Source: Cyanophora paradoxa CCMP329
Taxonomy: Eukaryota > Plantae > Glaucophyta
Length of the DNA stretch: 64,000 nucleotides
Assembly (NCBI GenBank): GCA_004431415.1
Contig: QPMI01000048.1
Location: forward strand, 1-64,000
Direction: 5' to 3'
How positions within the stretch are numbered: position 1 is the stretch's first letter; the number at the start of each line of letters is the position of its first letter. Below are positions 9,682 through 53,100 of this stretch, piece after piece. The notes under the pieces are model-generated. The model worked only from the letters and a program-made list of their open reading frames with translations. It was not told the origin of the DNA and ran no database searches. A program made the position numbers and the translations under genes.

Positions 9682-11504
9682 TGACCCTTGGGCCCATTCC
9701 TATTCCTGCTCTCGCTGCCCCTCTCGACGCTCCTTTCCCCCCATTCCCTGCGGTCCCGATCCCTGTGCTCCTTGGCCCTCTGGCCCCGCCTCTGCCTCCT
9801 CCCTCCTTACAACTTGCTGTCACGGGGCCTCTTCACTTGCCTGTTCCCCGGCAGGTCCCTGGTCATCTTGCAGCTCCATACCCCTTCTTACCTCTTCCCC
9901 TTGCTCCTCCACTTCCGCCCCTGCGAGGCCCTCTTTCTGACGTCCTCCTGGTTCAGCCCCCTCTTCAGCCCATCCTTCTTGCCCCCGCTTCTGCAACTGT
10001 GACGCTGGGCGGCACTATCTTTTGCATGCCCCTCCCGCCTCTACGTCCCGGTCTCTTTGCATCTGCATCCACTTTCCCGGATCCGCTTGCAGGCCCCCTC
10101 GCCTCCAGAGCTCGCCATCACTTCGGCCTCCCTCGCCTCCGCTCTCGATTCTCCATACCCTTCGAATAGCCGCCTTCTCTCTCCTCCTCCGCCCTCCCTC
10201 CCCCCTCGAGCTCCGGGTCCTCGGCCTCTGCCCGCTTCCGAGTGTTGGCGAGACTGTCCTCTTTTCGGTCTCCCCGTCATTCCGGCTCCCTGCTCCCCCT
10301 TCGGCGCCTCGGGTCCCATATGCGGGTCCTATCCCGCTTCCTGGCGCTCGTGAGATTCGCCGCCGGCGCCCTCGTCGGGCCCTTGCGCCCTCGAGCTCGT
10401 CTCTCTCTGCGCCGCCCATGGCCATGACCTCCGTGTCATCTGATCCGGCGCCACCCGACCTTTCTCCAGCTTCGCTGCCCTCTCTTCGGCGCCGGCAGCG
10501 ATCCCCGTCACCTGCTCGCGGCCCTTCCCCTGCCTCCGACCCTTCCTCGGCCCCCTCCTCGCCTAGGCCTCTTCCGTCTCGTCGGCCCCCGCCGCATTCC
10601 CGTCGGCGGATCTCTCGATCGACCCTGGACTCTCCGCCTGCCACTGTCTGCGGGGTACCTCCGCCGCCGTGTTCGGCGCCGGCTGTCAGTACTTTGCTCG
10701 GTAGCTCCCCCGTCGTGGCTCCTCGGGGGCCTCTTCGTCGTCGTCGTTCGCTGGGTTCCGGCTCCGGGTCAGATTTCTCGCCGGGCTTACCTTCTCCTGG
10801 CTCTGCTCCTGGGCCCTCAGCTCCGGGACCGGCTTCCCCGATCTCCTCCCGGACTCGTGGTCGTACCCGTCGCCGGCTTGCCGAGCCTGCGGCTCCTTCT
10901 ACTTCCCCCCGGCGGTTTGCCGGGCCGGACCCTCCGGCCTTTGTTCTTGATACCGGACTGCCGCCTTTGCCTTCGTCTTCTGCTTCGCTGGTCGCGATCG
11001 TATCCCGCCGGCGCCGGCGTACTTCTTCGTCTTCTAGTTTAGTTCGGTCTGGTTCGGATTCTGATCGTAGTGTTGATGCTAGAGTTAGTTTCAATACTAG
11101 CTATAGTCCTCGTGCTCGACCTGTTGTTCGCCGTCGTTTGCAGTTCGATTGCCCGCCTCGACCCTGGCCGGCTTTAGTGATTCCTTTGACTGTCCTTTTG
11201 CCTGCTCTTGATCCGCCTGTTCCGCCTCCTGTGTCCTCCTCGACCTCGTGCCGTAGCTCTGCCCTTTCGCATCGTCCTGCTTCGCCTCCGCCTCCATGTC
11301 GTCTTGTTGTTCCTCTTACTTGTCTTCTTCCTGTTATTTATCTTTCTCAATTTTGTCCCCCGCTTCTTAGTGATGTAATTCCTTCTGATATTGATGGTAT
11401 CTCTAGCTCTGGCTCTTCTTCGTGTCAGTTATCCTCTGTCCCTAGATCTGCTCGATTTATCGTCTCTTCTCGCTATCGATCTGTCTCGAGCTCTGTGTCT
11501 TTCC

Positions 11505-11798
11505 TTTTTTATTGTCGATTTTGGCTCTTTGTCTTATCTTTCTTCGTGCTCTTGTCTTAGTTATTTTGCTTTTTTGTCTTTATGCCCCCTGGGCAGCCCC
11601 CGCAGTGCTGGTGTCTAGAGACTGTGGCCGGTAATTCACCAAAAAAAAATTTTTTTATTGTCGATTTTGGCTCTTTGTCTTATCTTTCTTCGTGCTCTTG
11701 TCTTAGTTATTTTGCTTTTTTGTCTTTATGCCCCCTGGGCAGCCCCCGCAGTGCTGGTGTCTAGAGACTGTGGCCGGTAATTCACCAAAAAAAAAAAA
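11505..11798 (+). repeat. Head-to-tail duplication of the LINE 3' terminal 146 bp, each copy ending in poly(A)
   Basis: 11505-11649 (A9) and 11650-11798 (A12) are identical apart from tail length. Confidence 0.95.
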
Positions 11799-12330
11799 TC
11801 ATGATCAAGTTATATAATTAAAGGGAAATCCGAATCGGCGGGAGGCGGCGTGACGTGATCGCGTCACCGCGTCACCCGTCACTGGGCCGTCAGCAGGGCT
11901 GGGGTAACTTAGTAACGGTGGGGTTACCGACCAAGACCGATCGGCCAGGCCGCGGGCTCGGCGGCTAGCGCGCGGTGCGCCGGTGGCACCGGTGCCTAGC
12001 TAGCGCCTGCTGGGCAGCTGAGCTAAAAGAAGCAACGTTATCACAAAGCCTTGAAGCAGCATCGACTCGCTCGCACCCTGTGAGCAAAGATTGGGATCCC
12101 AGCGCGCGGGTGCGTAGTCACTGCGTACGCGTGCGAAATCGATCCTCGCGGCGACTTGCACTCTGGGGCTGACGCGGGATCTTGCCGGGGCCGGCAGCTA
12201 GCTAGTCCTGGGTGAGCTTTTGATCGCTTTCGAGGGCTGAAATTTTAAAGGCGGTACCGGTAGCACTGCGGCAGCTGCAGCCTTGAAGGAGATAGGTGCG
12301 CCGCGCGCCTTGTCTCGCTGGCCCATGCAT

Positions 12331-15300
12331 ATGGGTCCCGAAGTCGACGTCGCGCCGATCTGATCATCGATATCGTCCTGCATATGCATGCGCAGCTGCG
12401 GTCGCGTCAGAGCTCTTCGAAGAATGTTTCGGCAACTCTTCCCTCAGTGCACGAAGGAGACGTGCACGGTGGCGCTCTGCGCCACCCGCACGGGCCAGGT
12501 CAGTCCCGCGCATCCCCGGCCCGAAATCGATCGATATCCCAATTGCAATCCTGGGGCCGTGCGCGCCGACGCCGGGGCAGGACGAGGAGGCGATCGCGGC
12601 GGAGTTGACCTCGAAGAGGCGCAAGTTCGAGGACCCGAGCTTCCCCGCGACCATGGCGGCCCTGTACCGCAACGGAGCCTCGCCGTTCGCTGATGCGCCG
12701 TGGAACCGGCCCGTCGGCGGCGGGGCGGCGGCGGCTGCTGCTGCAGCTGCTGCTGCTGCTAGCGCTGCTGCTGGGGCGGCGGCGGCTGGGGCCGCTGGCG
12801 CAGCGGCAGCTGGAGCGGCCGCAGCCGGTGCAGCGGGCGCGGCCGCAGCCGGCGCAGCGGCCGCGGCCGCAGCCGGCGCAGCGGCCGCGGCCGCAGCCGG
12901 CGCAGCGGCCGCCGGAGCTGCTGGCGCCGCTGGTGCGGCAGGGGCAGCAGGAGCAGCGGCAGCGGGTGCGGCCGCAGCCGGTGCAGCGGGCGCAGCTGCA
13001 GCCGGCGCCGCCGGTGCGGCAGGGGCCGCAGGAGCAGCCGGTGCAGCGGGCGCGGCCGCAGCCGGTGCAGCGGGCGCGGCCGCAGCCGGCGCAGCGGCCG
13101 CCGGAGCTGCTGGCGCCGCTGGTGCGGCAGGGGCAGCAGGAGCAGCGGCAGCGGGTGCGGCCGCAGCCGGTGCAGCGGGCGCGGCCGCAGCCGGCGCCGC
13201 CGGTGCGGCAGGGGCCGCAGGAGCAGCTGGAGCAGCTGCCGCAGCCGGCGCTGCGGGCGCGGCTGGTGCAGCCAGTGCCGCGGGCGCGGCGGCAGCAGGG
13301 GCCGCCGGCGCGGCGGGCGCGGCCGGCGCAGCGGGCGCGGCCGGCGCGGCGGGCGCGGCTGGAGCAGCCGGCGCGGCAGGCGCAGCCGCAGCCGCTGGCG
13401 CTGCCGCCGGTGCAGCAGGGGCCGCTGGAGCAGCGGGCGCGGCTGCGGCGGCAGGCGCGGCCGGGGCGGCAGGCGCGGCGGAGGCAGCAGCCGCGGCGGC
13501 CGCGGCGGCGGCGGCGGCGGCGGCGGCGGGGCCCAACGCCGACGCCATCCCAAGCGCAGGTGCCGCCGCCCCGCCCACCCGCCCGCCTCGCCCACCCGCC
13601 CGGGTCCTCTTTCAGCTTTTCCGCCCTGCCCTGACCTTCCCCCTCTGCCCCGACCCGCCCCGGGCAGGCTCTGTGGACGGGGACTTCGTCGAGAAGCACT
13701 GCATCTGGCTCCGGTCCGCCCCGCCCCGCCCGCTTATAAAACTTAATTGTAATTAGACAAGGCCAGCCCGTCGACGTCTCAGCCTGCCTACTTTCGTGTA
13801 CCTCATTACTAAAGTTAGGCGCCCCGTTTAGACCGGACAGGCGCCCCTAATATATATATTATCTGATTCTTTCTTCGGAGCGCAGGCCGAAGGAGTTCTG
13901 CCCGGGGCGCCCGCAGCTCTTCATTGACGGCTCGAACCCGGGCGACGTCATCCAGGGCATGCTCAGTGCGCCTTGGAAGCATCCAGAATCTCGATCTAGA
14001 AACATCTAGAAACATCCAGAATCTAGATCTAGATAACTTAAGAGTCTAGAAAATGCATTCGATCGGGCGTCGTCCAGGGCGTGCTCAGTGCGCCCCCGGC
14101 CCCGGAGTCCACTTCGATTATTCGGGCCGGGCCCTCTCGCCTTCCTAAAAAACCGATCTTCTCGCCGGCGCCGCTGACGCGACCGGGCGGGCCATCCCAG
14201 GCGACTGCTGGGTCCTCTCGGCCATACAAGGTACATATGCCACCCCCGCCCGTTCCCGCGCTCCTCGGAAAATTCTTCTCTCTCGCTGTCCCTCTTCGGA
14301 TCTAATTCTCGCTGCCCGCGGCCCGGCGCAGTTCTGGCGGCCCAGCCGGCGCTGCTCCAGCGCCTCTTCGTCTCCACCGCCAACGCCCACCTCGGCATGT
14401 GCGCCCGGCCCCTCGCTAGAGACTAGAAACTAGAGGCCTCGTTAGCTATGCCTGAATCACGACTCAGTGTACCTCCGCTCACGCCCAACCCCCTTTCAGT
14501 TACACTGTGGCCATCTTCAAGGACGGTTTCTGGCACGTGCGTGTACACCCTCCCCTTCTCTCCGCCACCCCCACTCCCCGTACCGACACGCCCCGTCCTC
14601 CCTCCCTCCCCCGCAGCGCATCGTGATCGACGATCGGATCCTGTGCCGCTCCGACCGCACCCCGCTCTACGCTTCCTGCCGCGACCGTGCACACGCGCCC
14701 TCCCCTATCGGCCGGCCCCCTCTCCTCCCTCTCTCTCTCTCGCCCTCACGCCCGCCGCTTGTGTTCCGCAGGCAACGAGATCTGGCTCCCGTGCGCCCGC
14801 GCCGCAGCCCACGATCGCGATCGAGCCTCTAGCCCTCGGCCCTCGTTTCTTCGTTCGCCCTTTTTTGAGGCTTCGTTCGTTCCCTTCGTTCGCAGCCTCC
14901 TGGAAAAAGCGATGGCGAAGGCCAACAACTGCTTCGAGGTCCGGATCTATTGTCCTATCTTATCTTCTTCTTTTAAAGACTCTTGTCTGTCTGTTTGTTT
15001 GTTCAAACGAACAGAACCTGAACTACGGGCACGTGAGCACCGCCCTCCGAGACCTGACCGTGCGCCCCTACCCCCCCCCCCTTGGATCCCCACCCCCGAA
15101 CCGACCTTCGTTCGCAGGGCGGGACCTCCTCCATGACGTGCGCCCGAACCCGCCCCGCGCGCCCCGGTCCCGGCTTGAGAGTGAGAGAGAGATCTAAAGC
15201 CGGGACTGCTCTGCTCTGCTCAATCTTTAATCCGAGCACTCGATTGTACGTGTGGGGCCGGCTGACCGGTTGGCCCGGGGACAGGTACCTCAAGCCCGCG

Positions 15301-18300
15301 GACCCCCGCGGCGAGGCGCGCCCCCCCCCCCCCCCCCTCCCCCTTACCCCTGCCCTTCTCACTCACCCCCCCCCCCCCCCCACACACACACACAGGTGCC
15401 GCGGGAGCGGCGGCCCTTCGCGTTCCGGGCGGAGCTGGCCCCCGAGGAGGCCTGGGCCCACCTCGCCTCCCTCCTCGCCCGCGGGTCCGCTCGCCCCGCC
15501 GTCGCCCCGCCCCGCCCGCTCGCCCCGCCTTGAAGAAGAAGAAGAAGCTATAGCCAGGCTAAGAAGAGCCTTTAAGACCAGACAAGCTTAGAAAGTCTTA
15601 GCTCGCTCGCGAGATCTTCTTTCAATGTGTCCGATGCGGTCCCGCTCTCCGCGCGCCGGCGCGCAGGGCCCTGCTTGGGTGCATCTGGGTGGACCTCGGC
15701 ACCCTCGGCCTCGGCCTCATCGACAACGGCGTCGTCAAGGTACGTACCCCCGGGCCCCTATCTCCCTCTACCCCCCTTCACTCTTCTCCCCCCGCAGAAC
15801 CACGCGTACGGCGTCCTGGAGGCGCGGGAGGTCGAGGAGGGGGCCCGCCGGCACCGCCTCGTCCGCGTCCGGAACCCTTGGTGCGCCTAACTAATTAAAC
15901 TTATATGGAACTACAAGCGATAGAAGATAGAGAAAGGAAACCTTGGCGTATCAATAGGAACGCTCTAGCTTTGGACTACGATTCCGGCTGAGCGGTCTTC
16001 GGCGTCCGCGGCGGGGGCGCAGGGGCCGCCAGGAGTGGTCGGGCCGCTTCGCCGACGGCTCGCCGGACTGGACGCCCGCCCTCCTCGTGCGCGCCCTCTT
16101 ACCCCCCCTCGCTCCTTCCCCCGGAGGGGTGGGGGGGGGGGGGGGGCGGCCCCAACCTTTCGCGCTTCGTTCGCAGGAGAAGCTCAGGCACAGCTTCGCG
16201 GACGACGGCACCTTCTGGATCCTCTGGCAGGATTTCGTCCAGGTACCCCCCTCCCGTTCATTCCCCCGCTCACCAGTTCTCCCGCGGAGAGTTCTCACAT
16301 CGAGGCAGACATTCAACTGCCTGTATGCGTGCGAGATCTTCGCAGACGGCTGGAAGGGCCAGAGTGTCACGGTGCGATTCAATTGAGTCGCTCTTGAAGT
16401 TCATCCGAAACCACCCCGCTCGGAATCGACCCGGGGTTCCGTACGTAGGGGGCCTGGAAGAAAGGCGTGAGCGCCTTCGGGCCGCCCCCGGACAGCGCCT
16501 GGGAGCGCAACCGCCAGTTCCACCTGAAGGTACTGTACCCCCGCTGGATCCGGAGCCGTACCCTTTATTCGACAAAGACGTACCCCCGCAGGTGACGGGC
16601 CGCACGCGCCTCGAGATCTCCCTCTCCCAGGGTGACGTCCGGCCGCTCGGCCTCGACGAGGTGCGTGCGTTCCCGCCTGGATCTGCGACCCCCCCCCCCC
16701 CCCCCCCATCTGACGCGGTACCCCAGCTGCACTTCCCCGCCGGCGTTGGCGTCGCGATCGTCAAGGCAAAAGGTGGGATCCTTCAAGGCTTTCCGTCTAT
16801 CTCGGTTCTGGCTGCGCTTGTTCTTCAGCTAAAGCTCGAGCAGGCTCCGCCCCGGGCCGCCCCCTCCGCAGCATCGACGCCCCCTCCATCGTCTTCCAGT
16901 CGCCCTGCCTTTACTCCCGCGACGGTGCTCAGAATTCGATCTCCACTTCGAATTACTCTCACTTTCTTCCCTCTTTTATTCTGACGGCCCGCCTCCGGCA
17001 GTGTCTGCCTCCGCCGTCCTCGAGGCCGGCGACTACAAGGTGGGGCCCGGCGGATTCGAACCCGAAGCCCCGCTCCGCGCACCCCCTTTCCGAACGCTGA
17101 GCCGCTGCCCACCGTATACGTACCCCCAGATCGTGCCGATGACGGCCAAGCCCGACCAGGAGGCGATCTACAGCCTTTCCGTCTGGTCTGACCGTGACGT
17201 CGACCTCGAGGTCCGGATTCGGATCCGGGCTCGAATCCGCCCCGGGGTCTTTTCTGACGCCCGGGTAGGGGGAGAAGGCCATCCAGGAGCTCGACAAGGA
17301 GGAGGTCACGGCCGCCGGAGGTACGATTCCCACGAACGTGCGACCGTACCCCCCTTCCCGCGTGACCAGGCCGCGCAGAGGGCGCCGGGGCGGACTTCGC
17401 TGCGCCCCCCGCGCCGAGCGTGTACCCCCCGACCCGTGCGCGTCCCCCGCGGCCCTGGCCCGGATCGGTTCGTTTCCGAGAGGCTGACAGTCCCGCAGGG
17501 CCCCCGCCCGAGAACCCCAAGAACGCAGCGTGCGCACCTCGCGATCGATCGCACCACCCGCTCAACGATCGCATCGGCACTTTCTAAATCCGAAGTGCCG
17601 GCGCAGGGCGGTGGCGATGGAAGTGCTGGACGCGCTGAGCGCCGCCACGCAGCGCCTCGCCGCCGAGAACTCCGCCCTCAAGAGGGTGAGCACGAATGTT
17701 GCAGGAGCTCGAGGAGTTTCGATCTGTTCGAAACTTACGGCTGACGCGTACGCGCGCAGCGGCACCAGCAGCTGCACCTGCCCCCCGTGCGGGTCCTCTG
17801 CATCGACGGCGGCGGCATGCGCGGCGTCATCCCCCTGACCGCGCGCCCCCGTCCCAGCCCCAACGCGCCCCATCCCTCTCTCCCTCTTTTCTGAGCGGCG
17901 GTCGCCGTGCCCGCAGATTCTGAACCACATCGAGAAGACTGCGAAGAAGGTGAGAGAAGGCCCTGGGCTTGTCCTTATTCGCCTTGTCGCTCGGATCGTG
18001 TTCCGCGGTCTGACCAGCCCATCGCGGGCAGCCCATTCCCGAGCTCTTCGATTTCATCGCCGGTCAGCTCCGAATTCGATCGCGACTCCCGTCGAGATCG
18101 CTATCGGCCTTAAGCTTAAGATCGCCAATACAATGTTAAGCTTAAGGGAGTGCGGCCCTGGAATAGCTTATGGGCGCGGCGGCCTTAATTCGACTCCCGT
18201 CGAGATCGCCGTCGGTCTTCTAAAGGGCGCGCAGGGACGTCCGCCGGGGCGATCGCGGCCATGGCCCTCTCGGCGAGGGGCAAGGACGGCAAGCTCGCCC

Positions 18301-21300
18301 GCAACACCGACGCCGCCGTGCGCCCGCCCGCGCTTTTATCCGCTCGCTTTTCGTTTCCTCTAGATCTGACGCATTGCTTTTTGCTTTGGACGGGCCCGAC
18401 AGATCCGCTCCACGTACGAGTGGTGAGCCATCGGCGGCCGCGGCCGCGCGGCGGCGTCGCGCCGCTGCAGCTGATCGTGAGATTAACTCGCTTCTTTTGT
18501 TAGGGGCGGGCGGATCTTCCCCCACTCGACGAATGGCTTCGTTCGCTTCTTCCGCAACTTCCGCACCGCCTCCGTCTTCTCGGTGCGCCCCATCCGAGCT
18601 AGCTTCCCGCGGGTCTCAACTTGCTACCCCGCGGCCCGCCGGGTCGTCAAGCCTTTTTATGTTTCTATGAGCTTCCTGCAGTCTTTAGCTTCTGCATGTT
18701 ATCCCGCGGTCGCGGTATCCCGCTTGCTTGGCGGCTTATAATTAAGCTTCCGCCCTTCTGACGGCCGGCCGGCGCTCGCCGGACCGTCGGGCGGGGCAGG
18801 GGTCGGGAATCGACGGGTACCTCGACTCGCTCTTCGGGCGGGCGGCGCGGCTCTCCGACCTCCCCAACGACATCATGGCGCGCCCCGTCCACGCCCCCGC
18901 CCCTTTCCGCTCCCCCAGAGATATATACGGCTTCGAAGCTTAAACTTCTAGGGACTTGCGCGCCCAGCCCCCGCCCCCGCCCCCGCCCCCGCCCCCGCCT
19001 CCGGCCTGCCAGAAGCCCAGAGAGCTCATAGACCTAGAGATAGCTAGTTTTATAGAAAACCGAGAATCATGGCGCGCCCCGCCCCCGCCCCATCCCGCGC
19101 CCCCAGAGATACGGCTTCAAATTAAAGCTTAAGCTTCTAGGGACTTGCAATTGGTTTATATCGAGAAGACCTAGACCTAGCATTGCGGATCTAGCAAGCT
19201 GGGCGATCTAGGCCCGCCCCCGCCACCCCCCGGCCCCCCCACCCCACCCCACCCCCCTCCTTGATCTCGTTTGACCCGCGGCCTTTCGTACCAGATCACG
19301 TCGTACGATACGGAGGCGCGCTGCCCCAAGTTCTTCAAGGTGACCTAGAACCCTCAAGGCCCCGCCGCCTCCGTCCCCGCCCCCGCCACCCCCACCACGA
19401 GCCCGACGTCGACCCCGCCGCCTCCTCCTCAGACGTGGAAGGCCCGGGAGAGCAAGGAGGTGCGCGCACGCATGCGCGATCGCGAGGCTCGCGAGAATTC
19501 GAATCTAGCCGCGATATCAGACATGGCCAGGCGTTGTATCGCACTTGAACGCACCACTTAAGCTTATGCGACTTGTGCGCGACAGGAGGACCACCTGCTC
19601 TACGACGTCGGCAAGGCGACGTCGGCGGCCCCCGCCTTCCTCCCCGCCCACGAGGTCGACGTCCCCCCCGCTTAAGCTTCTTTCTTAAGCTTTCTCTTCC
19701 AATACCTCATCCTTTAATTTAGTCTAGGTCTATAGCTATGTTACTGTGCGCAGTCTTTCTTTTGCTGACATGTCTTATGATCAAAATCAGATGCCGATGC
19801 CGAACGCGCCGGAGGACCGCGCCACGTCCACTTTCATCGACGGTCCGCTCAGATCAGATCAGATCTGATCAGATCTGATCTGATCAGATCTGAGGCGCTA
19901 AATTCGGTCTGATCTGACTCCGTTCGAGCAGGCGCGTGCGTCTGCAACAACCCGACGCTCGCGGCCTGGCTGGAGGTATCCAAGATGTACCCGGGTCGGC
20001 CTAGGCCTTCGTTCCCGCCACTACCCTCCCCCCCCCTCCCCCCCCCTCTGAATCTTTGTTCGCAGGGCGGGACATCCTGATGGTCTCGCTGGGCTCCGGG
20101 AGCTGCGGGACGCCCTTCTCGAGGCGCGACGCCGAGAAGTTCACCCTCCTCCAGTGCGCCCCGGGCCCTCTAGATCTCAAGCGATCCATTCTTATTTCGC
20201 CTTCTAACGGAGAATGTTTACGACGACGCGCAGCTGGGCGTCGAAGTCGGTTGACTGGTGCGTCGCTCATTTATATATACCGTCCTCGAATCGAAGTCGG
20301 CCCTTCGCTGGAATCTAAATTTAAACTCGGACGGCACGTGTACGGCCGACGTCGACAGCATCCTGGACGGCACGGCCGACTCGATCAACCAGGTCGCCGG
20401 AGAGCTCCTGGGCGAAAACGTGCGCAAATCAATTATATATACCAGCTGGTTTTTTTTTTGGTGAATTACCGGCCACAGTCTCTAGACACCAGCACTGCGG
20501 GGGCTGCCCAGGGGGCATAAAGACAAAAAAGCAAAATACCAGCTGGAATTCGAAGTCTATTTCCCAAAAATCGTCTGCTGGATATATATAGAAGACTAGT
20601 TCCGATTACATAATCACTGGTGTCTAGAGACTGTGGCCGGTAATTCACCAAAAACAAAATCACCTTATACAATTATAATTAGGATTCGCGTCTCACGCGT
20701 CGCGTCCTTCGCAGTATTACCGCTTCCAGCCGGTGATGGCGCCCGGAATGGACGGCAAGCGACCTCGGCCACCTCGCTCTCTTTCTTTTTAAGGGGCGCC
20801 TAGCTCACCCACTGCCCGCGGCCGGCCCTCAGACATGTTCGACGGGCGGCGCGAGATGCTCCAGAACTTCGTTCGCCAGGCCCAGACGCAGGTTCGCGCG
20901 CGCGCGCACCGCCGCTCTTTGCTTCCCGGTCCGCCGACTGCCCGCGAATCTCTCACCTCGCGCCTGCACGCGCAGATCCTGCAGGGCCCGTCTCTTCAAA
21001 AGCTGGAGGAGGCCATCGACCGCCTGGTGCCCTCCGACCTGTCCTTATCGCAGTCCCACCTGACTAAAGACGTTCATTTGCAAAGGCACATTCTATTACA
21101 CTTTCTAGATCTAGTTGCTAGTACGTATACGTCGACCGGCCAGTGCCCTCCGCGGCCGCGCCGCCGCGCCCCGGCCCGGCGCTGGTGCCGGCGCCACAGC
21201 TCTCTGGCCCTTCGAATTCTTCTTCTTCTTCTGAGCCGCGGGGCCCGCGGCCGGGGTCAGGTGTCGGCCACCGAGGCGCGAACGAAGCTGCTGGCGGAGG

Positions 21301-22069
21301 ACCCCGAGGCCCTGCGGCCCATCCGGCCCGCGGAGCCCTCCGCCCCGGGCAAGTCCGTGCGGGTGCGTGCACGCGCCCCTTACATACGCGAATTCGAATC
21401 ATTGTATAAGAATCAATTTTACATGTATAAGCCTTTATGCGCCTCCTCTTAGAAGCCCATAAGCCTATATGAGTAATTAACGGGCTCGAACTTCAGAAGC
21501 CGAACATGGTGGTGATCGCGAAGGAGGACCTGGACGCAGCCCTCGGGGCCGCCGTCGACCGCGAGACGGGTGCGCCCCCCTTCTTCCTTTAATTTCTCGC
21601 GGAGAGATATATAGCCTCAGCCATAGAAGGCTTAGGTGGCTTAGGCGGGGCGGTAGAGATGAGGCTGGGCTGTACATGTGCCCGGCACGCGTCGATCGCT
21701 TTGCCTGCAATCGGTGTTCTTATCAACTCTAGATCTAAGGCTCTACCGCTTCGCTTGCACTCGGTGTTCTTGTAGCTCTTAAGGCTCTACCTCCACACCT
21801 AAGCCACCTAAGGCTGTCTCTCGACCACGAGATGGGCGCGCCCTCCTCTCTCGACCACGAGATGGGCGCGCCCTCCTTTGATTTCTCGCGATAGATTAGA
21901 TTTCCGTGTAATCTGAGCTCATTGGTTTCCGAACGCGCCAGCAGATGGGCCGGGGCCGGCCCGGGCGCCAGGCGCTGCGCAGCGGCGCGTGTACCCCACG
22001 CCGCAGGAGACCAGCGCGGGAACCGGGACGGCGGCGTCGGTATCACGGCTCGCGGCGCCGGCCGTTTAA
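12331..22069 (+). CDS. Calpain (CysPc + domain III/C2L) - coiled coil - patatin-like phospholipase fusion protein, ~40 exons; start codon tentative
   Basis: Calpain part: KFEDPSFP, WLR|PKEF, QGMLSDCWVLSA (Cys 14206), VIDDRI, EIWLPLLEKAMAK, NHAYGV (His 15801), VRVRNPWG (Asn 15873), DDGTFWI, then GAWKKG..NRQFHL, YKIVPMT..YSLSVWSD. Patatin part: VLCIDGGGMRG (17805), FDFIAGTSAG (Ser 18240), ATSAAP, FIDGACVCNNP, VSLGSG, YYRFQ. Linker exons 17269-17840 stay in phase with no stop. Stop TAA at 22067-22069. Confidence 0.85.
12716..13530 (+). repeat. ~270-codon Ala/Gly low-complexity repeat (AAAGAAG...) inside the calpain gene
   Basis: Almost all codons are GCN/GGN with a variable third base, with internal higher-order duplication. 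The frame runs from FEDPSFP to a phase-1 donor at 13560 that matches the next exon (G)SVDGDFVEKHCIWLR. Confidence 0.85.
20450..20538 (-). mobile_element. 5'-truncated LINE copy (~88 bp incl. poly A) in a patatin-region intron
   Basis: Exact reverse complement of the LINE 3' end. Flanked by ATACCAGCTGG at 20439-20449 and 20536-20546 (TSD overlapping 3 nt of microhomology). Confidence 0.93.
20617..20659 (+). mobile_element. Minimal LINE 3'-end copy (33 bp + A-rich tail) in the same intron
   Basis: CTGGTGTCTAGAGACTGTGGCCGGTAATTCACC followed by AAAAACAAAA; candidate TSD AATCAC at 20612-20617 and 20658-20663. Confidence 0.85.
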
Positions 22070-23169
22070 TACGAGCCTCGCATTGAATTGCGATCGATTT
22101 ATATAATTACATGTACAGAGAGAGTCCTTGGGCCCTGGCCATGGCCCGTTATGAATAGGCTTGGCGATCTTATATAATTAGACATCTTCTGGATTCGTGT
22201 GCAATTTCATTCGTGATGTACATACATGCTTATTACATATAATATAATAGTACAAGGGTCACTTCCGTACTTCTTCGATCCATCAGATTTCAAAACACAT
22301 CTAGATCTAGACACGGCGTTCCAATTGATTTCAAATTTCAAACGACGGCACTCTCTAGTCGATATGCACATGCGCAAGCCTTGGCCATTGGAATGATTGG
22401 ATCGCTATGCCATCGCTAATTTTTTTAAATGCACATTCCAGCGCGGACGGGCGAAGATTGAATTCAGCAGCCTCCAGCAGGGGCCCCAGCTGCAGGCCCC
22501 GGCCCCGCTCCCCCCCTCCCCCCCGCGCCCCGCGTGGGCCCTCCCTGGCCCTGGGGCCCCGCCGCACCGTCGGGGCCGGGCCCGAGAGCGCGCGGCGAGG
22601 CTCTCGACTCGGCAAGCTCCCTGGCCTGCCCAGCACTCGCACTACCAATGGAAACCGTTGAACCTTGCACGTTAAACGTAACCGACCGCGCGCGGCGCGC
22701 GCCAGACGCTCACGATCGGAGCCCGGCGCACAGCTGCCGCGCGCGCGCGCGACAGCCGGTAATTATATGTAAGCAGCAGGAAGAACGGACTTCGGCCGCG
22801 GGAGGGCATGCATATGGCATGATGCGCATGGCGGTGAAAGTCCACGTGCACGTCGACGTCGCGGCGGCCCGGCCCGCGGCCGACGCCGGCGCCGGCGGAC
22901 GAGGGCGCCGGCCAGGCCGCGCGCGCGGCCGGCCTCCGTTCGCAGGCCTAGGCCGAGCTCGTTGTTGGCATACTCACCTGCGCGATCATCGGATCAGTGT
23001 GCTACGTATACATCCATATGATGCGCGTGCGGCCTCGAGCCTCGGCCTAGGCCTCGAGCTCGCCGCGGCCGCGCGGCCGACCTGCCGAGGCGCGGCGACG
23101 TCGCGCGCGCGGATCGCGCGGCTCGAGCGATAAAAAAAGCGCGAGAAATCTAGTACCCCAGCACGAGCG

Positions 23170-50100: not shown

Positions 50101-53100
50101 GAGTCGATATGAGCCCTACCCCCCCGTAGGAGCGCGAGCCCTACCATAGATTTGATTCGAGTCGATATGCCGCCACACGGCCTCCTTCTTTCCCCCTCCT
50201 CCTCTATTCGTCCAGTCCTCTCCCGTCCCGCCCGCCCCTCCCTCCCTCACCGGCGGTCGGCGCGCAGGCGGGTCTACGAGGAGCTGCGCGCCAAGCTGCC
50301 CCAGGCCGAGCTCCCCGAGCTGGTAGTCTGATCTCTCTGATCTCTCTCTTTTCACTCTCTCTCGTTCGGTTCTCACGGCTCTCGCCACCTTCCCGCCAGG
50401 TCCTCGACGGGGGGGAGAAGGAACTCATGCCCCGGTGCGCGCGGCGCCGTACCCCTCCACCAACCCCCCTCCCCTCCCTCCTCTCCGCCCTCCTCCACGC
50501 CCTCCTCCCCGACCTCCTCTCACCCCCCTTCAGGTTCGCGGAGTGGCTGGGGGCGCTGGGCGCCGAGCTGCCCTCCCGCTGCCTCCTCGTCCTCGACGGC
50601 CTCGATCAGGTGGCGCCCCGATGCCTTTCTTTAAGCTTTAAGCTTTAGCTCTCTTAAGCCCGTCTATTACGCTTTCCCTCCCGCTCTTTGTCTCCTCTCT
50701 CTTAAGCTCTTTCTATGAAGCTTTCTTCTTTCTCGGCCCCTCTCCTCTTCCATTGAGCGAGAAAGAAAGAAGCTTCATAGAAAGAGCTCGGTCGAGAAAT
50801 GGAAGAGGAGAGGGGCTTCTTTCTTTGGAAGAAGGAGAGCCTTTTCTGCATTGAGCTCTCCTCTTCCAAAGGAGGCCTCATCAATACCGTCTTTTTCTCT
50901 TCTGATACCCCCTCTCCCCCTCTCCCTCCCCCTCTCCCCCCCCCTCCTCGCCCCCCCCCCCCCCCCCCCCACTCCCCCTAATCCCGTCGTCCCCTCAGCT
51001 GCTGGACCGGGAGGGCGCCCAGGGCCTGGACTGGCTCCCCGCCGGCCTCGCCGGGCCCCGCCTCCGCGTCGTCCTCTCCTGCGGCCCCGGTGCGCCCGGC
51101 TCCCAAGATTAGATCCCTAAGATTAGATCCCTAAGATCGGCTAGGGCGTGGTGCGCCCGGCTCCTAAGATTAGATCCCGGCACCGCCGATCTAATTTCCA
51201 ATGCTCCTGCTCCATCGACCCCGGCTCCTAAGATTAGATCCCTGAGATTAGGTCCCGGCACCGCCGATCTAATTTCCAATGCTCCTGCTCCATCGACGGC
51301 GCGGCGCGGCGCCGCTGACGCGGGGCGGGGCGGGGCGGGCGGGCGGGGCGACAGGCACGCGCTGCAGGCGGCGGAGGGCCGCGCCCACGTCCGCCTCGAC
51401 GTCACCCCCTCACCGACGTCCAGGCCCGCCCCGCCCCCCGCCCCCGCCCCGCCCCGCCCTTCAGAACCACCTTCAAATATTCCCATCACCGACCCGCCCG
51501 CCCCGCCCCGCCCACTAGAACCGCGTTACGTTGCCTCGCCCCGCCATCCCCCCCCCCCCCCCCCCCCCCCCCCCGCGCCCGCCGCCCCGCGCCCCGCCGC
51601 CCTCCGAACGAGCGCGCGCCCGGGCTGAGGCGGCGGGGCCCGGGGGGCAGGCGGAGGCGCTCGTGCGGATGGACCTCGACTACAGCGGCAAGTCCCTCTC
51701 AAAGGTACCCCCCCTCCTTCCCCCCCCCCGGCTCCCCGTGACGCGACGGTGGCACAGGAGCACCTGGGAAGGGTCCTGGCCTCGCCGCAGTGCCGCACGC
51801 CCCTCTTCGTCCTCGTCGTGCGCCCCATCCTAGAATGAACTCATCTGGGCAATTCCCATCTGGCCATTCGAGAATGGGGCGTTCATTCTAGAGTTCCACC
51901 CTAGGAATCGTCCATCCCGCCGTCCTCGTCGTGCGCCCCATCTTAGGATGAACTAGGCGGCCTTTCCACCGCTTGCTTCGCCCGTCCCGCCCCGCCCCGC
52001 CCGCCCTTGCTCCATCCCGCCCGCCCGGCCCTAAACTAGCCCCGCCTGGCCCCGCCCGGACCCGAACCCCCCCCCTTCCCCCCCCCCCCTCCTTTCGCCC
52101 GGCCCGACTCCGCCCCGCCCCCCTCGGCAGCTGCTGGAGGAGCTGCGGGCGGGGGCGGTGCACGGGACGCTGGGGCAGCGGCTCGATGAGGGCCTCGCCT
52201 GCACCTCCGCCGCCGACCTCTTCGCCCTCGTCGTGCGCCCCGCGCCCGCCCGCCCGTCTAAGTTGAAGGAAACGAGCGTCTTCGATTGCGATTAACATTC
52301 CTTAAAGCGAGCTTCGTGCGCCTATCTAAGGTTTACTTTTCTCTTGCTCGAGCTTTTTTTGCCTTGGGCCATCGGACTTTTCGAGGAGCGATGCTTCGAT
52401 CCGCCGGCTTGCCCCAGCGGCCTTCTTCGGCGCGCCTGAACCAACGGCCCTCCCGGCGCAGATCAAGCGGCTGGAGGGGGCGCACGGGGCGGAGCTGGTT
52501 CGGGGCGCCCTGGCGGCGGTCGCCTGCTCCCGGCGGGGCCTCGCCGAGGGCGAGATCCAGGGCCTCCTCCAGGTCCGGCCCGCCGGGTTATCAGGCGCTC
52601 TTAGGCTTCGTTGTTAGACGTTTATAATCAATTAGAGGTAGAGAGGTAGACCCTCTTCTCTATCTAGCTGCAGTTTCGGCTTCTATCTAGGGCGAGATAT
52701 CAGGCGCTATTAGACTTCAGGCGCTATTAGGGCGTCCTGCAGGCCCGGCCGGCCCCGCCCCGCCCCGCCCCGCCCGTTACTGAGCGCCATCAACTTCATT
52801 AGACGGCCTGCGTCCTTCCTTTCTTTCTTCGCAGCTAATCTAGTTCTTTAGTCACATAGGACGCACATCGCGTAACGTTGTCCTTCGTCTCACTTCCCCG
52901 TCCCCGCAGGCGGCCGGCGTGCCGCACAGCGGTCTCGCGTGGGCCGAGTTCCTTGCCGCCTCCCAGGTCCCCCCCTCCCCCTCCCCCTCCCCGGCCTCGG
53001 CCTCCCCCGCACCTGCTGACCCTCCCCGCCCCGCCCCCCGGCAGTCCCTCCTCTCGGAGCGTGACTCGCTGCTCGGCTTCTCCCACCGCTACGCCGAAGA

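What the first reader, a model, noticed from the sequence alone, without database searches (positions are those of the whole stretch)
12331..22069. Calpain-patatin fusion: a protease and a phospholipase in one polypeptide
Seen: the calpain triad (C14206, H15801, N15873) and domain III are joined to a patatin domain with DGGGMRG, GTSAG and DGA motifs. The join is an unbroken in-phase exon chain (17269-17320, 17370-17435, 17499-17529, 17607-17684, 17760-17840) that includes a heptad-like linker, EVLDALSAATQRLAAENSALKRRHQQL. Established: calpains are often Ca2+-regulated, membrane-associated proteases; patatins act as membrane-damaging effectors in bacterial CBASS (CapV) and occur in fungal NLR architectures. 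I do not recognise this combination as a described architecture. Inference: a protease-gated lipase, self-activated by cleavage or oligomerisation, acting in membrane remodelling or regulated cell death.
Basis: partly seen in the sequence, partly recalled or inferred. Interest (0 to 1): 0.8.

Follow-up and report, generated by a model that had tools for sequence, protein, structure and literature searches.

The report
Calpain protease fused to patatin lipase
In the alga Cyanophora paradoxa, one intron-rich gene appears to encode a calpain protease joined through a short leucine zipper to a patatin-type lipase, a pairing found in no paper or relative searched; no transcript has yet confirmed it.

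Summary
On the + strand, 12424-22069, about 48 short exons encode an intact calpain (Cys 14206, His 15801, Asn 15873, plus domain III). They are followed by an intact patatin domain (DGGGMRG, GTSAG, DGA). The organism is Cyanophora paradoxa. The public AUGUSTUS model of this locus (tig00000189_g14305.t1) already joins the two halves, but it is defective: it omits the catalytic Cys exon and the DGGG loop.

Evidence for one gene:
- The five linker introns (58-77 nt) score like the gene's other 42 introns.
- Linker exons L1 and L4 have codon usage like the confident exons, in the chain's frame only.
- Homology to a paralogous calpain-zipper-LRR protein runs past domain III, through L1 and L4.
- The zipper's fourth heptad leucine is encoded on the first patatin exon.
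- An independent DNA contig spans the join.

Weak points: no RNA cover in two transcriptome-like runs, exon L2 and the last exon are doubtful, and ATG 17617 could give a stand-alone patatin.

No other calpain-patatin protein appeared among the 120 closest calpain relatives or in the literature searched. I rate it a new domain architecture of known families. Function is untested. Gene-level confidence is about 0.8.

The parts
12424..22069 (+). Whole gene as modelled by hand: 48-49 exons and a 1001-1020 aa product. The 5' ATG is at 12424. The stop TAA is at 22067-69 (an alternative stop lies at 21590-92).
   Evidence: The exon table is in frame with a single terminal stop. The AT-richer flanks at 11000-11800 and 22100-22400 bracket it.
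12424..12716 (+). Exons E1 (12424-12498) and E2 (12581-~12716). They hold an N-terminal Cys-rich motif (CTKETCTVALC) and the start of the calpain domain (FEDPSFP).
   Evidence: Aligns to the P0004 N-terminus. The end of E2 is uncertain: there are many phase-1 G|GTGC donors in the following repeat.
12717..13667 (+). 951-nt tract, 85% G+C, with period-3 (GCN/GGN) repeats. Most likely an intron; possibly a partly coding Ala/Gly insertion.
   Evidence: TRF arrays. Codon log-odds is negative in the Ala/Gly frame. The tract is absent from the paralogues.
13668..16371 (+). Calpain catalytic core (CysPc), exons E2b-E17. Cys 14206-08, His 15801-03, Asn 15873-75.
   Evidence: Three-frame views. Pfam Peptidase_C2 hits on single exons. 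Continuous alignment to P0004, 44% identity, E 2e-166. Codons checked.
16449..17210 (+). Calpain domain III (C2L), exons E18-E23. It ends ...SVWSDRDVDLE with donor GAG|GTCCGG at 17211.
   Evidence: Aligns to residues 357-489 of P0004, which Pfam calls Calpain_III. The same donor type is used at 14939.
17269..17320 (+). Linker exon L1 (GEKAIQELDKEEVTAAG).
   Evidence: Codon log-odds 1.23 per codon, with the off frames negative. Homologous to P0004 (DVDLEGE...AAG). Present in the public model.
17379..17435 (+). Linker exon L2 (EGAGADFAAPPAPSVYPPT). Probable but not certain. It is 57 nt long, so skipping it keeps the frame.
   Evidence: Good flanking splice scores (8.7 and 7.3). GC3 is 0.95, but codon log-odds is only 0.03. 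Used in the public model.
17499..17529 (+). Linker exon L3 (PPPENPKNA).
   Evidence: Acceptor preceded by CTGAC 11 nt upstream, and a GTGCGC donor. Log-odds 0.22. Present in the public model.
17607..17685 (+). Exon L4, a leucine zipper (AVAMEVLDALSAATQRLAAENSALKR). It contains ATG 17617, the only possible separate start for the patatin part.
   Evidence: Log-odds 0.74. Ungapped alignment to the post-domain-III zipper of P0004 (3 of 3000 shuffles reach the score) and of Rhodelphis P0013 (61 of 3000). The Leu heptad register is shared.
17760..20891 (+). Patatin domain, exons P1-P18. DGGGMRG at 17805-25, nucleophile Ser codon at 18240-42 (GTSAG), and DGA Asp at 19839-41.
   Evidence: Three-frame views. 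Pfam Patatin hits on the exon piece and on the public model. PDB patatin Pat17 and CapV are the best matches. NCBIfam and PADLOC phospholipase hits. Codons checked.
17841..17916 (+). Apparent GC-AG intron (donor ACC|GCGCGCCCC) after the DGGGMRGVIPLT exon. Two more such introns lie at 18878-19294 (ATG|GCGCGCCCC) and 20755-20832 (G|GCAAGC).
   Evidence: Only these boundaries keep the conserved patatin sequence and the frame. The public model avoids the first by an upstream GT and so loses VLCIDGGGMRGVIPLT.
20976..21569 (+). C-terminal exons P19-P21, with no recognised domain.
   Evidence: Codon log-odds 0.49-1.08. No Pfam hit.
21945..22069 (+). Doubtful last exon P22. If the donor at 21570 is not used, the protein ends ...RETGAPPFFL* at 21590-92.
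   Evidence: Log-odds -0.15. Alternative stop shown. TGTAA at 21907.

Best explanation
This is a single nuclear gene of Cyanophora paradoxa (public locus tig00000189_g14305). It encodes a polypeptide of about 1000-1020 residues with these parts, in order:
1. An N-terminal Cys-rich motif.
2. A complete calpain catalytic core with the Cys/His/Asn triad.
3. Calpain domain III (C2L).
4. A Pro/Ala-rich linker of about 45 residues.
5. A four-heptad leucine zipper.
6. A complete patatin phospholipase domain with its Ser/Asp dyad and DGGGxRG oxyanion loop.
7. A tail of about 100 residues with no known domain.

Origin. The gene arose in the Cyanophora lineage by duplication of a calpain-C2L-zipper-LRR gene. 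That architecture is shared with Rhodelphis. After the duplication, the LRR module was replaced by a patatin module at the end of the zipper.

Likely working (inferred, not shown). The zipper makes a parallel dimer, which brings two lipase and two protease domains together. The protease and the lipase act on the same membrane-proximal target. The disordered Pro/Ala linker is the obvious place for calpain cleavage, which would release or unleash the lipase.

What is shown: the intact motifs, the frame, the splice signals, the codon bias, the paralogue homology and the DNA contiguity. What is inferred: transcription as one mRNA, dimerisation, both enzyme activities, and any cleavage.
For: Gene structure:
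- The 48-49 exons join in frame with one terminal stop.
- Linker introns are 58-77 nt. Their donor scores (5.1-9.3) and acceptor scores (3.3-8.7) lie within the range of the 42 other introns (6.6 +/- 2.1 and 5.6 +/- 2.4). They use the top-ranked sites of the region.

Coding signal:
- The linker exons have GC3 of 0.95, against 0.60 G+C in introns.
- Their codon log-odds is 0.70 per codon in the chain's frame and about -0.6 in the other frames. This equals the mean of the confident exons. With held-out training, L1 scores 1.23 and L4 0.74.
- No 100-nt window between 17150 and 17800 has G+C below 0.60, whereas both gene flanks fall to 0.30-0.49.

Homology:
- The hand model aligns to paralogue P0004 from residue 5 to 575 (E 2e-166), running past domain III through L1 and L4.
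- L4 plus the first residues of patatin exon P1 match the P0004 zipper (3 of 3000 shuffles) and the Rhodelphis P0013 zipper (61 of 3000). They share the Leu register 11/18/25/32, and the fourth Leu lies in the patatin exon.
- Exon P1 has no in-frame ATG before the DGGG loop, so it must be joined to L4.

Other support:
- The public BRAKER1/AUGUSTUS model joins the halves.
- A DNA contig from a 2012 run spans 16689-18956 without a difference.
- In the tree, the calpain part sits in a clade of four Cyanophora paralogues with support 99.
Against: - There is no transcript evidence.
- The public model is a prediction. Its authors warn that Cyanophora models need manual curation and that genes lie end to end with overlapping UTRs.
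- Exon L2 has neutral codon statistics, and the last exon has negative ones.
- L4 holds an ATG (17617) that could start a separate zipper-patatin protein.
- Read-through of the L1 or L3 donor gives stops at 17485 or 17585, which could end a calpain-only product.
- Three introns need GC donors.
- The zipper homology rests on 26-36 residues of coiled-coil-like sequence (p about 0.001-0.02).
- The joined model could not be sent to any family, fold or database tool.
Confidence: 0.62

Rival explanations
1. There are two adjacent genes. A calpain-C2L gene ends shortly after domain III, by a stop at 17485-87 or 17585-87 when the L1 or L3 donor is not used. A separate patatin gene starts at ATG 17617. 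The fusion would then be an artefact of chain-building and of AUGUSTUS merging neighbours.
For: Cyanophora genes are packed end to end, and its HMM gene models are admitted to be error-prone. An ATG exists in L4, and read-through stops exist. L2 has neutral coding statistics. No RNA spans the join.
Against: - The gap between the stop and the ATG would be only 30-130 nt. It shows no drop in G+C and no non-coding signature.
- L1, L3 and L4 are coding-like only in the frames that chain together.
- L1 and L4 are homologous to internal parts of paralogous calpains, in which the residue matching Met 17617 is Asn or Ser.
- The five introns are as well formed as the rest.
Confidence: 0.1
2. There is one locus with two products: the full calpain-zipper-patatin protein, and also a shorter zipper-patatin protein from an internal start site upstream of ATG 17617. 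Lipase would then exist both tethered and free.
For: Met 17617 lies five residues into the zipper exon. It would give a patatin with a typical short N-terminal lead of about 40 residues before DGGG. Internal promoters are common in fused genes (general knowledge).
Against: No promoter-like AT-rich stretch lies upstream. The Met is not conserved in the paralogues. There are no transcript data either way.
Confidence: 0.15
3. This is a recent, silent or decaying fusion: a spare calpain paralogue that captured a neighbouring patatin gene and is no longer, or only rarely, expressed.
For: No RNA contig cover in two runs. The three introns with GC donors could be GT donors that mutated. A long GC-rich repeat and duplicated donor segments lie in the introns.
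Against: All 48 or so exons stay in frame without a stop. All six catalytic or oxyanion motifs are intact. Codon bias is as strong as expected for a translated gene (GC3 0.92-0.95). GC-AG introns are functional in eukaryotes generally.
Confidence: 0.1

Closest known systems
Calpain-C2L-leucine zipper-LRR proteins. Examples: Cyanophora paradoxa tig00021435_g21402.t1 (P0004), Rhodelphis marinus m.9918 (P0013), and the EukProt transcript GFYU01005010 (P0023).
   Same: Same calpain subfamily: 44-51% identity, in a clade with support 99. The order CysPc, C2L, acidic or Pro-rich linker, then zipper is the same. The zipper sits in the same place with the same Leu register.
   Different: The C-terminal RNI-type LRR module (Pfam LRR_6) is replaced here by a patatin phospholipase domain plus an unknown tail.
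Non-classical CysPc-C2L calpains, such as plant DEK1 phytocalpain and the CysPc-C2L type of Zhao et al. 2012 (PMC3563603).
   Same: Catalytic triad, QG..DCW and RNPW motifs, a C2L domain, and no penta-EF-hand domain.
   Different: None of the 41 architectures in that survey mentions a patatin or phospholipase partner. From memory of the rat mu-calpain Ca2+ sites, the residues matching E302, D309 and D331 are kept here, but the R104-E333 pair is Pro/Thr. Ca2+ control is therefore uncertain and was not tested.
Patatin Pat17 (PDB 1oxw) and the bacterial CBASS phospholipase CapV (PDB 8zr9, 9kh7).
   Same: Best solved-structure matches to the lipase half. NCBIfam CBASS_lipase and PADLOC phospholipase-effector profiles are the best family hits. 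The DGGGxRG, GxSxG and DGA motifs come in the canonical order.
   Different: Scores are far below the family cut-offs (52.9 against 200 bits) and were obtained on a partial sequence. This is a eukaryotic, intron-rich gene with no cyclic-nucleotide synthase partner. Here the domain is tethered to a protease by a zipper.
Patatin-ABCG transporter fusions noted earlier in the same genome (scan notes s1-517558, s1-589918, s1-621003).
   Same: The same organism attaches a patatin domain to an unrelated large protein by exon-level fusion.
   Different: The partner differs (an ABCG pump against a calpain), and there the patatin is N-terminal. I did not compare the sequences.

Membership tests
Calpain (MEROPS C2; Pfam Peptidase_C2 PF00648) | Catalytic triad Cys, His, Asn in the motifs QGxxxDCW, HAY and RNPW | tested here: met
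   The motifs read VIQGMLSDCW (Cys 14206-08), NHAY (His 15801-03) and RNPW (Asn 15873-75). The residue before DCW is Ser, not the usual Gly.
Calpain (MEROPS C2; Pfam Peptidase_C2 PF00648) | Full-length CysPc domain homologous to known calpains | tested here: met
   Single exons hit PF00648. In the sandbox, the joined hand model aligns over the whole PF00648 span (44-344) of P0004, E 2e-166. The joined model itself was not scanned against Pfam.
Calpain (MEROPS C2; Pfam Peptidase_C2 PF00648) | Domain III / C2L (PF01067) after the core | tested here: met
   Exons 16449-17210 align to P0004 residues 357-489, which Pfam calls Calpain_III (E 1.5e-13 for P0004).
Classical calpains (CAPN1/2 type) | C-terminal penta-EF-hand domain | tested here: not met
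   No EF-hand exon follows. After domain III come the linker, the zipper and the patatin domain.
Calpain (MEROPS C2) | Ca2+-dependent proteolytic activity | not testable with these tools
   This needs an enzyme assay. The partial conservation of Ca2+ ligands was judged from memory only.
Patatin-like phospholipase (Pfam PF01734) | Gly-rich oxyanion loop DGGGxRG | tested here: met
   DGGGMRG at 17805-17825.
Patatin-like phospholipase (Pfam PF01734) | Nucleophile Ser in GxSxG and catalytic Asp in DG[AG] | tested here: met
   GTSAG with the Ser codon at 18240-42. DGA with the Asp at 19839-41. Both Gly residues are split by introns.
Patatin-like phospholipase (Pfam PF01734) | Profile match above the gathering score | tested here: met
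   The public model P0001 scores 30.2 bits against a cut-off of 27.7, although it lacks the DGGG exon part. The exon piece alone scores 15.1 bits.
CBASS CapV phospholipase (NCBIfam NF041079) | Equivalog score of at least 200 bits, and an operon with a cyclic-oligonucleotide synthase | tested here: not met
   52.9 bits on a partial sequence. This is a eukaryotic spliced gene, and no synthase was seen in the flanks examined. It is a resemblance of fold and clade only.
Calpain-zipper-LRR subfamily | Post-C2L leucine zipper followed by RNI-type LRRs | tested here: not met
   The zipper is present and homologous. However, tblastn with P0004 and P0013 finds no LRR part anywhere in the 64-kb window. 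This gene is a derivative of the subfamily, not a member by architecture.

The most novel reading that the evidence does not exclude
Glaucophyte calpains of this clade would be a modular stress or defence toolkit. On this reading the calpain-patatin protein is a self-contained, dimerising executioner. Its lipase would be held in check until the calpain, triggered by Ca2+ influx or membrane damage, cuts the Pro/Ala linker. That would be a eukaryotic counterpart of signal-activated patatin effectors such as CapV.
Probability: 0.15. Interest if true: 0.75.

Novelty: new variant of a known kind. Interest (0 to 1): 0.45.

Why it matters
Calpains and patatin lipases are each well-known executors of membrane-linked signalling and cell death, but they are known as separate proteins. 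A natural fusion of the two is a "Rosetta stone" hint that they act on one pathway or one membrane target.

The fusion also offers a simple test system: one protein, two active sites, and a linker that may be the protease's own substrate.

It shows how the calpain family diversifies in a deep-branching alga, by swapping the module behind a conserved zipper.

On the practical side, the public gene model of this locus lacks the catalytic Cys and the oxyanion loop. Any proteome-based survey would therefore score both enzymes as dead or partial, and the corrected exon map changes that.

Tried and rejected
- **RNA evidence.** The look-up of sequencing runs listed no RNA holder of the stretch. Read laying on two DNA runs and two RNA-like runs gave only DNA cover. 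The RNA contigs touch the stretch only at 24-35-nt repeats.
- **First word search.** A search with an exon-plus-intron ORF piece found nothing. The piece was too short, and the length filter excludes long proteins.
- **Patatin-side word search.** The search with P0001:741-869 returned only the query itself. Proteins under 478 aa were not candidates, so the blank is weak.
- **ESM Atlas look-up.** No usable hit.
- **The look-up of encoding contigs for paralogue P0004.** Not on record, so the intron positions of the paralogue could not be compared.
- **LRR remnant.** A remnant of the ancestral LRR module downstream of the patatin was sought by tblastn and not found.
- **Flanking ORF pieces.** No Pfam hits.
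- It was redone with coordinates only.
- **IQ-TREE.** The run did not finish, so FastTree was used instead.
- **Alternative donor at 17338.** This was the top PWM score, but it was rejected because the resulting frame runs into a stop inside L4 and gives Arg/Pro-rich sequence in the non-coding-like frames (my reading).
- **Joined model.** The spliced model has no reference, so it was kept in the sandbox only. It was not sent to Pfam, PDB, the big protein searches or structure prediction. Those steps were left out.
Full report
**What the sequence is.** The region is G+C-rich (0.55-0.86 in 500-nt windows) and has no long ORFs. Conserved peptide blocks lie scattered over all three + frames, as expected for a eukaryotic gene with many short exons. 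Single ORF pieces hit Pfam Peptidase_C2 and Patatin. Earlier notes of the scan name the genome as Cyanophora paradoxa. I confirmed this. A representative search with window:15958-16383 returned P0001, which EukProt lists as Cyanophora_paradoxa tig00000189_g14305.t1. Its sequence is made of this locus's exons.

**Exon map.** I read the locus in three-frame views and wrote an exon table by coordinates (and with exon L2). Forty-eight exons (49 with L2) join in frame from ATG 12424 to TAA 22067-69. They give 1001 residues, or 1020 with L2. The mean exon is about 63 nt. The common donor is GTGCGC, and acceptors are mostly GCAG.

In the sandbox, the joined model aligns to the paralogue P0004 from residue 5 to 575 with 44% identity (E 2e-166). 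That span covers the whole Peptidase_C2 and Calpain_III regions that Pfam finds in P0004.

The patatin half holds DGGGMRG, GTSAG and DGA, followed by the usual NNP, SLGSG and YYRFQ blocks. Its nearest solved relatives are potato patatin and CapV. Its best family profiles are the CBASS and PADLOC phospholipase effectors, all far below membership cut-offs.

**The public model.** P0001 is a BRAKER1/AUGUSTUS prediction, and it already joins the two halves through L1, L2, L3 and L4. It is defective in four ways:
- It reads the GC-rich repeat in another frame.
- It jumps from exon E3 to E8 and then to E13, and so loses the catalytic Cys exon.
- It uses a GT inside exon P1, and so loses VLCIDGGGMRGVIPLT.
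- It runs into a stop at about 19673.

The genome paper's authors state that such models need manual curation, that genes lie end to end, and that UTRs overlap. The model therefore agrees with the fusion but does not prove it.

**One gene or two?** Six lines of evidence favour one gene.
- *Splice signals.* I built donor and acceptor matrices from the 42 introns outside the linker. The five linker introns score 5.1-9.3 for donors and 3.3-8.7 for acceptors. The training means are 6.6 +/- 2.1 and 5.6 +/- 2.4. The linker introns are 58-77 nt long, against a training median of 90. They take the best-ranked GT and AG sites of the region, and four of the five have a CTGAC- or GTGAC-like motif 11-15 nt before the acceptor.
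- *Frame.* The four linker exons total 219 nt and hold no stop. By my estimate, sites picked by score alone would achieve this about 1 time in 7.
- *Codon bias.* In the chain's frame, the linker exons have GC3 of 0.95 and GC2 of 0.55, like the calpain and patatin exons (0.92-0.93 and 0.50). Introns have 0.60 G+C. The linker exons' codon log-odds is 0.70 per codon, against about -0.6 in the other frames. That equals the mean of the confident exons. With held-out training, L1 scores 1.23, L4 0.74, L3 0.22 and L2 0.03. L1 and L4 are therefore clearly coding, and L2 is open. L2 is 57 nt long, so skipping it keeps the frame.
- *No intergenic signature.* No 100-nt window in 17150-17800 falls below 0.60 G+C, while both gene flanks fall to 0.30-0.49. 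Some introns also dip below 0.5, so this point is weak.
- *Homology past domain III.* P0004 continues after DVDLE with GE...AAG like L1, then a Pro/Ala-rich linker, then a zipper. L4 plus the start of P1 (36 residues) aligns without gaps to that zipper. Only 3 of 3000 composition-preserving shuffles reach the score. It also aligns to the zipper of Rhodelphis P0013 (61 of 3000). All three share leucines at positions 11, 18, 25 and 32, and two share Asn 22. The fourth leucine is encoded on patatin exon P1, just before PPVRVLCIDGGG. The residue matching Met 17617 is Asn or Ser in the relatives.
- *No independent start for P1.* Exon P1 has no in-frame ATG of its own before the oxyanion loop.

Physical linkage is independent of the assembly in hand. 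A contig from a 2012 DNA run covers 16689-18956 with no difference.

**What is missing.** There is no RNA evidence. The two RNA-like runs that I could lay hold only short repeat matches, and the reads tools are capped. Read-through of the L1 or L3 donor would end a calpain-only protein at 17485 or 17585. ATG 17617 could start a zipper-patatin protein. I cannot exclude these as additional products. Three introns need GC donors (17841, 18878, 20755). Two of them begin with the same GCGCGCCCC, a one-base variant of the common GTGCGC donor, and the third is the classical G|GCAAG. The 3' end is uncertain: exon P22 has negative coding statistics, and an alternative stop lies at 21590-92. The 951-nt GC-rich period-3 tract after exon E2 is absent from the paralogues. 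It does not look coding in the Ala/Gly frame, so I treat it as an intron.

**Origin.** In a FastTree of 35 calpains, the window's calpain part falls in a clade of four Cyanophora paralogues with support 99. That clade lies inside a clade, also with support 99, that contains the calpain-zipper-LRR proteins of Rhodelphis and another protist. Proteins with two calpain cores were left out of the tree. The paralogues differ in what follows the linker: LRR in P0004, and long Pro-rich tails in P0005 and P0009. I did not check that note. The simplest history is duplication of a calpain-zipper-LRR gene, followed by replacement of the LRR module by a patatin module at the end of the zipper. No LRR remnant is left in the window.

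**Novelty.** Among the 120 best of 5815 calpain relatives, only P0001 carries PF01734. The patatin-side search found only P0001, though it could not see proteins under 478 aa. Full-text searches found no paper on a calpain-patatin protein. The survey of 41 calpain architectures does not mention patatin, phospholipase or LRR. The architecture thus sits unremarked in a public proteome, in a broken form.

**How it may work (inference).** The protein would be a zipper-mediated dimer carrying two proteases and two lipases. The C2L domain, and possibly the N-terminal Cys cluster that is conserved in all four Cyanophora paralogues, would serve as membrane-proximal elements. The 45-residue Pro/Ala linker is a likely cleavage site. 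From memory of the mu-calpain Ca2+ sites, three ligands of site 2 are kept but the R104-E333 pair is not, so Ca2+ control is possible but unproven.

The spliced protein has no reference, so it was used only inside the sandbox. It was not sent to Pfam, PDB, the large protein searches or structure prediction.

Noticed in passing
window 13946-13972 and 14068-14094: The last 20 nt of exon E3 plus its GTGCGCC donor are duplicated, at 93% identity, 122 nt downstream inside the following intron. This 'donor duplication' is of the kind another note reports elsewhere in this window (s1-590008 at 51808-51954). Using the second donor would shift the frame.
   Followed up: partly
window 17841-17916, 18878-19294, 20755-20832: Three of about 47 introns need GC-AG boundaries. 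Two start with the same GCGCGCCCC(C)GTCC motif, which suggests a shared intron family or a tolerated T-to-C variant of the common GTGCGC donor.
   Followed up: partly
window 12717-13667: A 951-nt tract of 85% G+C built of GCN/GGN period-3 repeats, with a 189-nt unit present 2.4 times at 91% match. It is open in the Ala/Gly frame and holds 15 phase-compatible G|GTGC donors. It may be an intron or a variable low-complexity insertion. The public model translates it in a different frame.
   Followed up: partly
window 12424-12498 (exon E1); P0004, P0005, P0009 N-termini: A Cys-rich N-terminal motif (C-x3-T-C-x-V-x2-C-x-T-x-T-G) is conserved in all four Cyanophora calpain paralogues but not in the Rhodelphis relative. 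It may be an acylation site or a metal site.
   Followed up: no
window 18083-18111 / 18191-18219 and 18889-18959 / 19077-19148: Introns of the patatin half contain internal direct duplications (90-96% identity, spacings of 108 and about 189 nt). One of them re-copies the start of the intron.
   Followed up: partly
window 19845-19895: A (GATCT/GATCA)-type microsatellite in the intron between the D and GA of the DGA motif draws more than 1000-fold summed contig depth in the DNA runs. It is therefore a highly dispersed repeat in this genome.
   Followed up: no
P0001 (public model of this locus): The public protein tig00000189_g14305.t1 lacks the catalytic Cys exon and the DGGGMRG loop and ends prematurely. 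Proteome-based surveys would misjudge both enzyme domains.
   Followed up: yes
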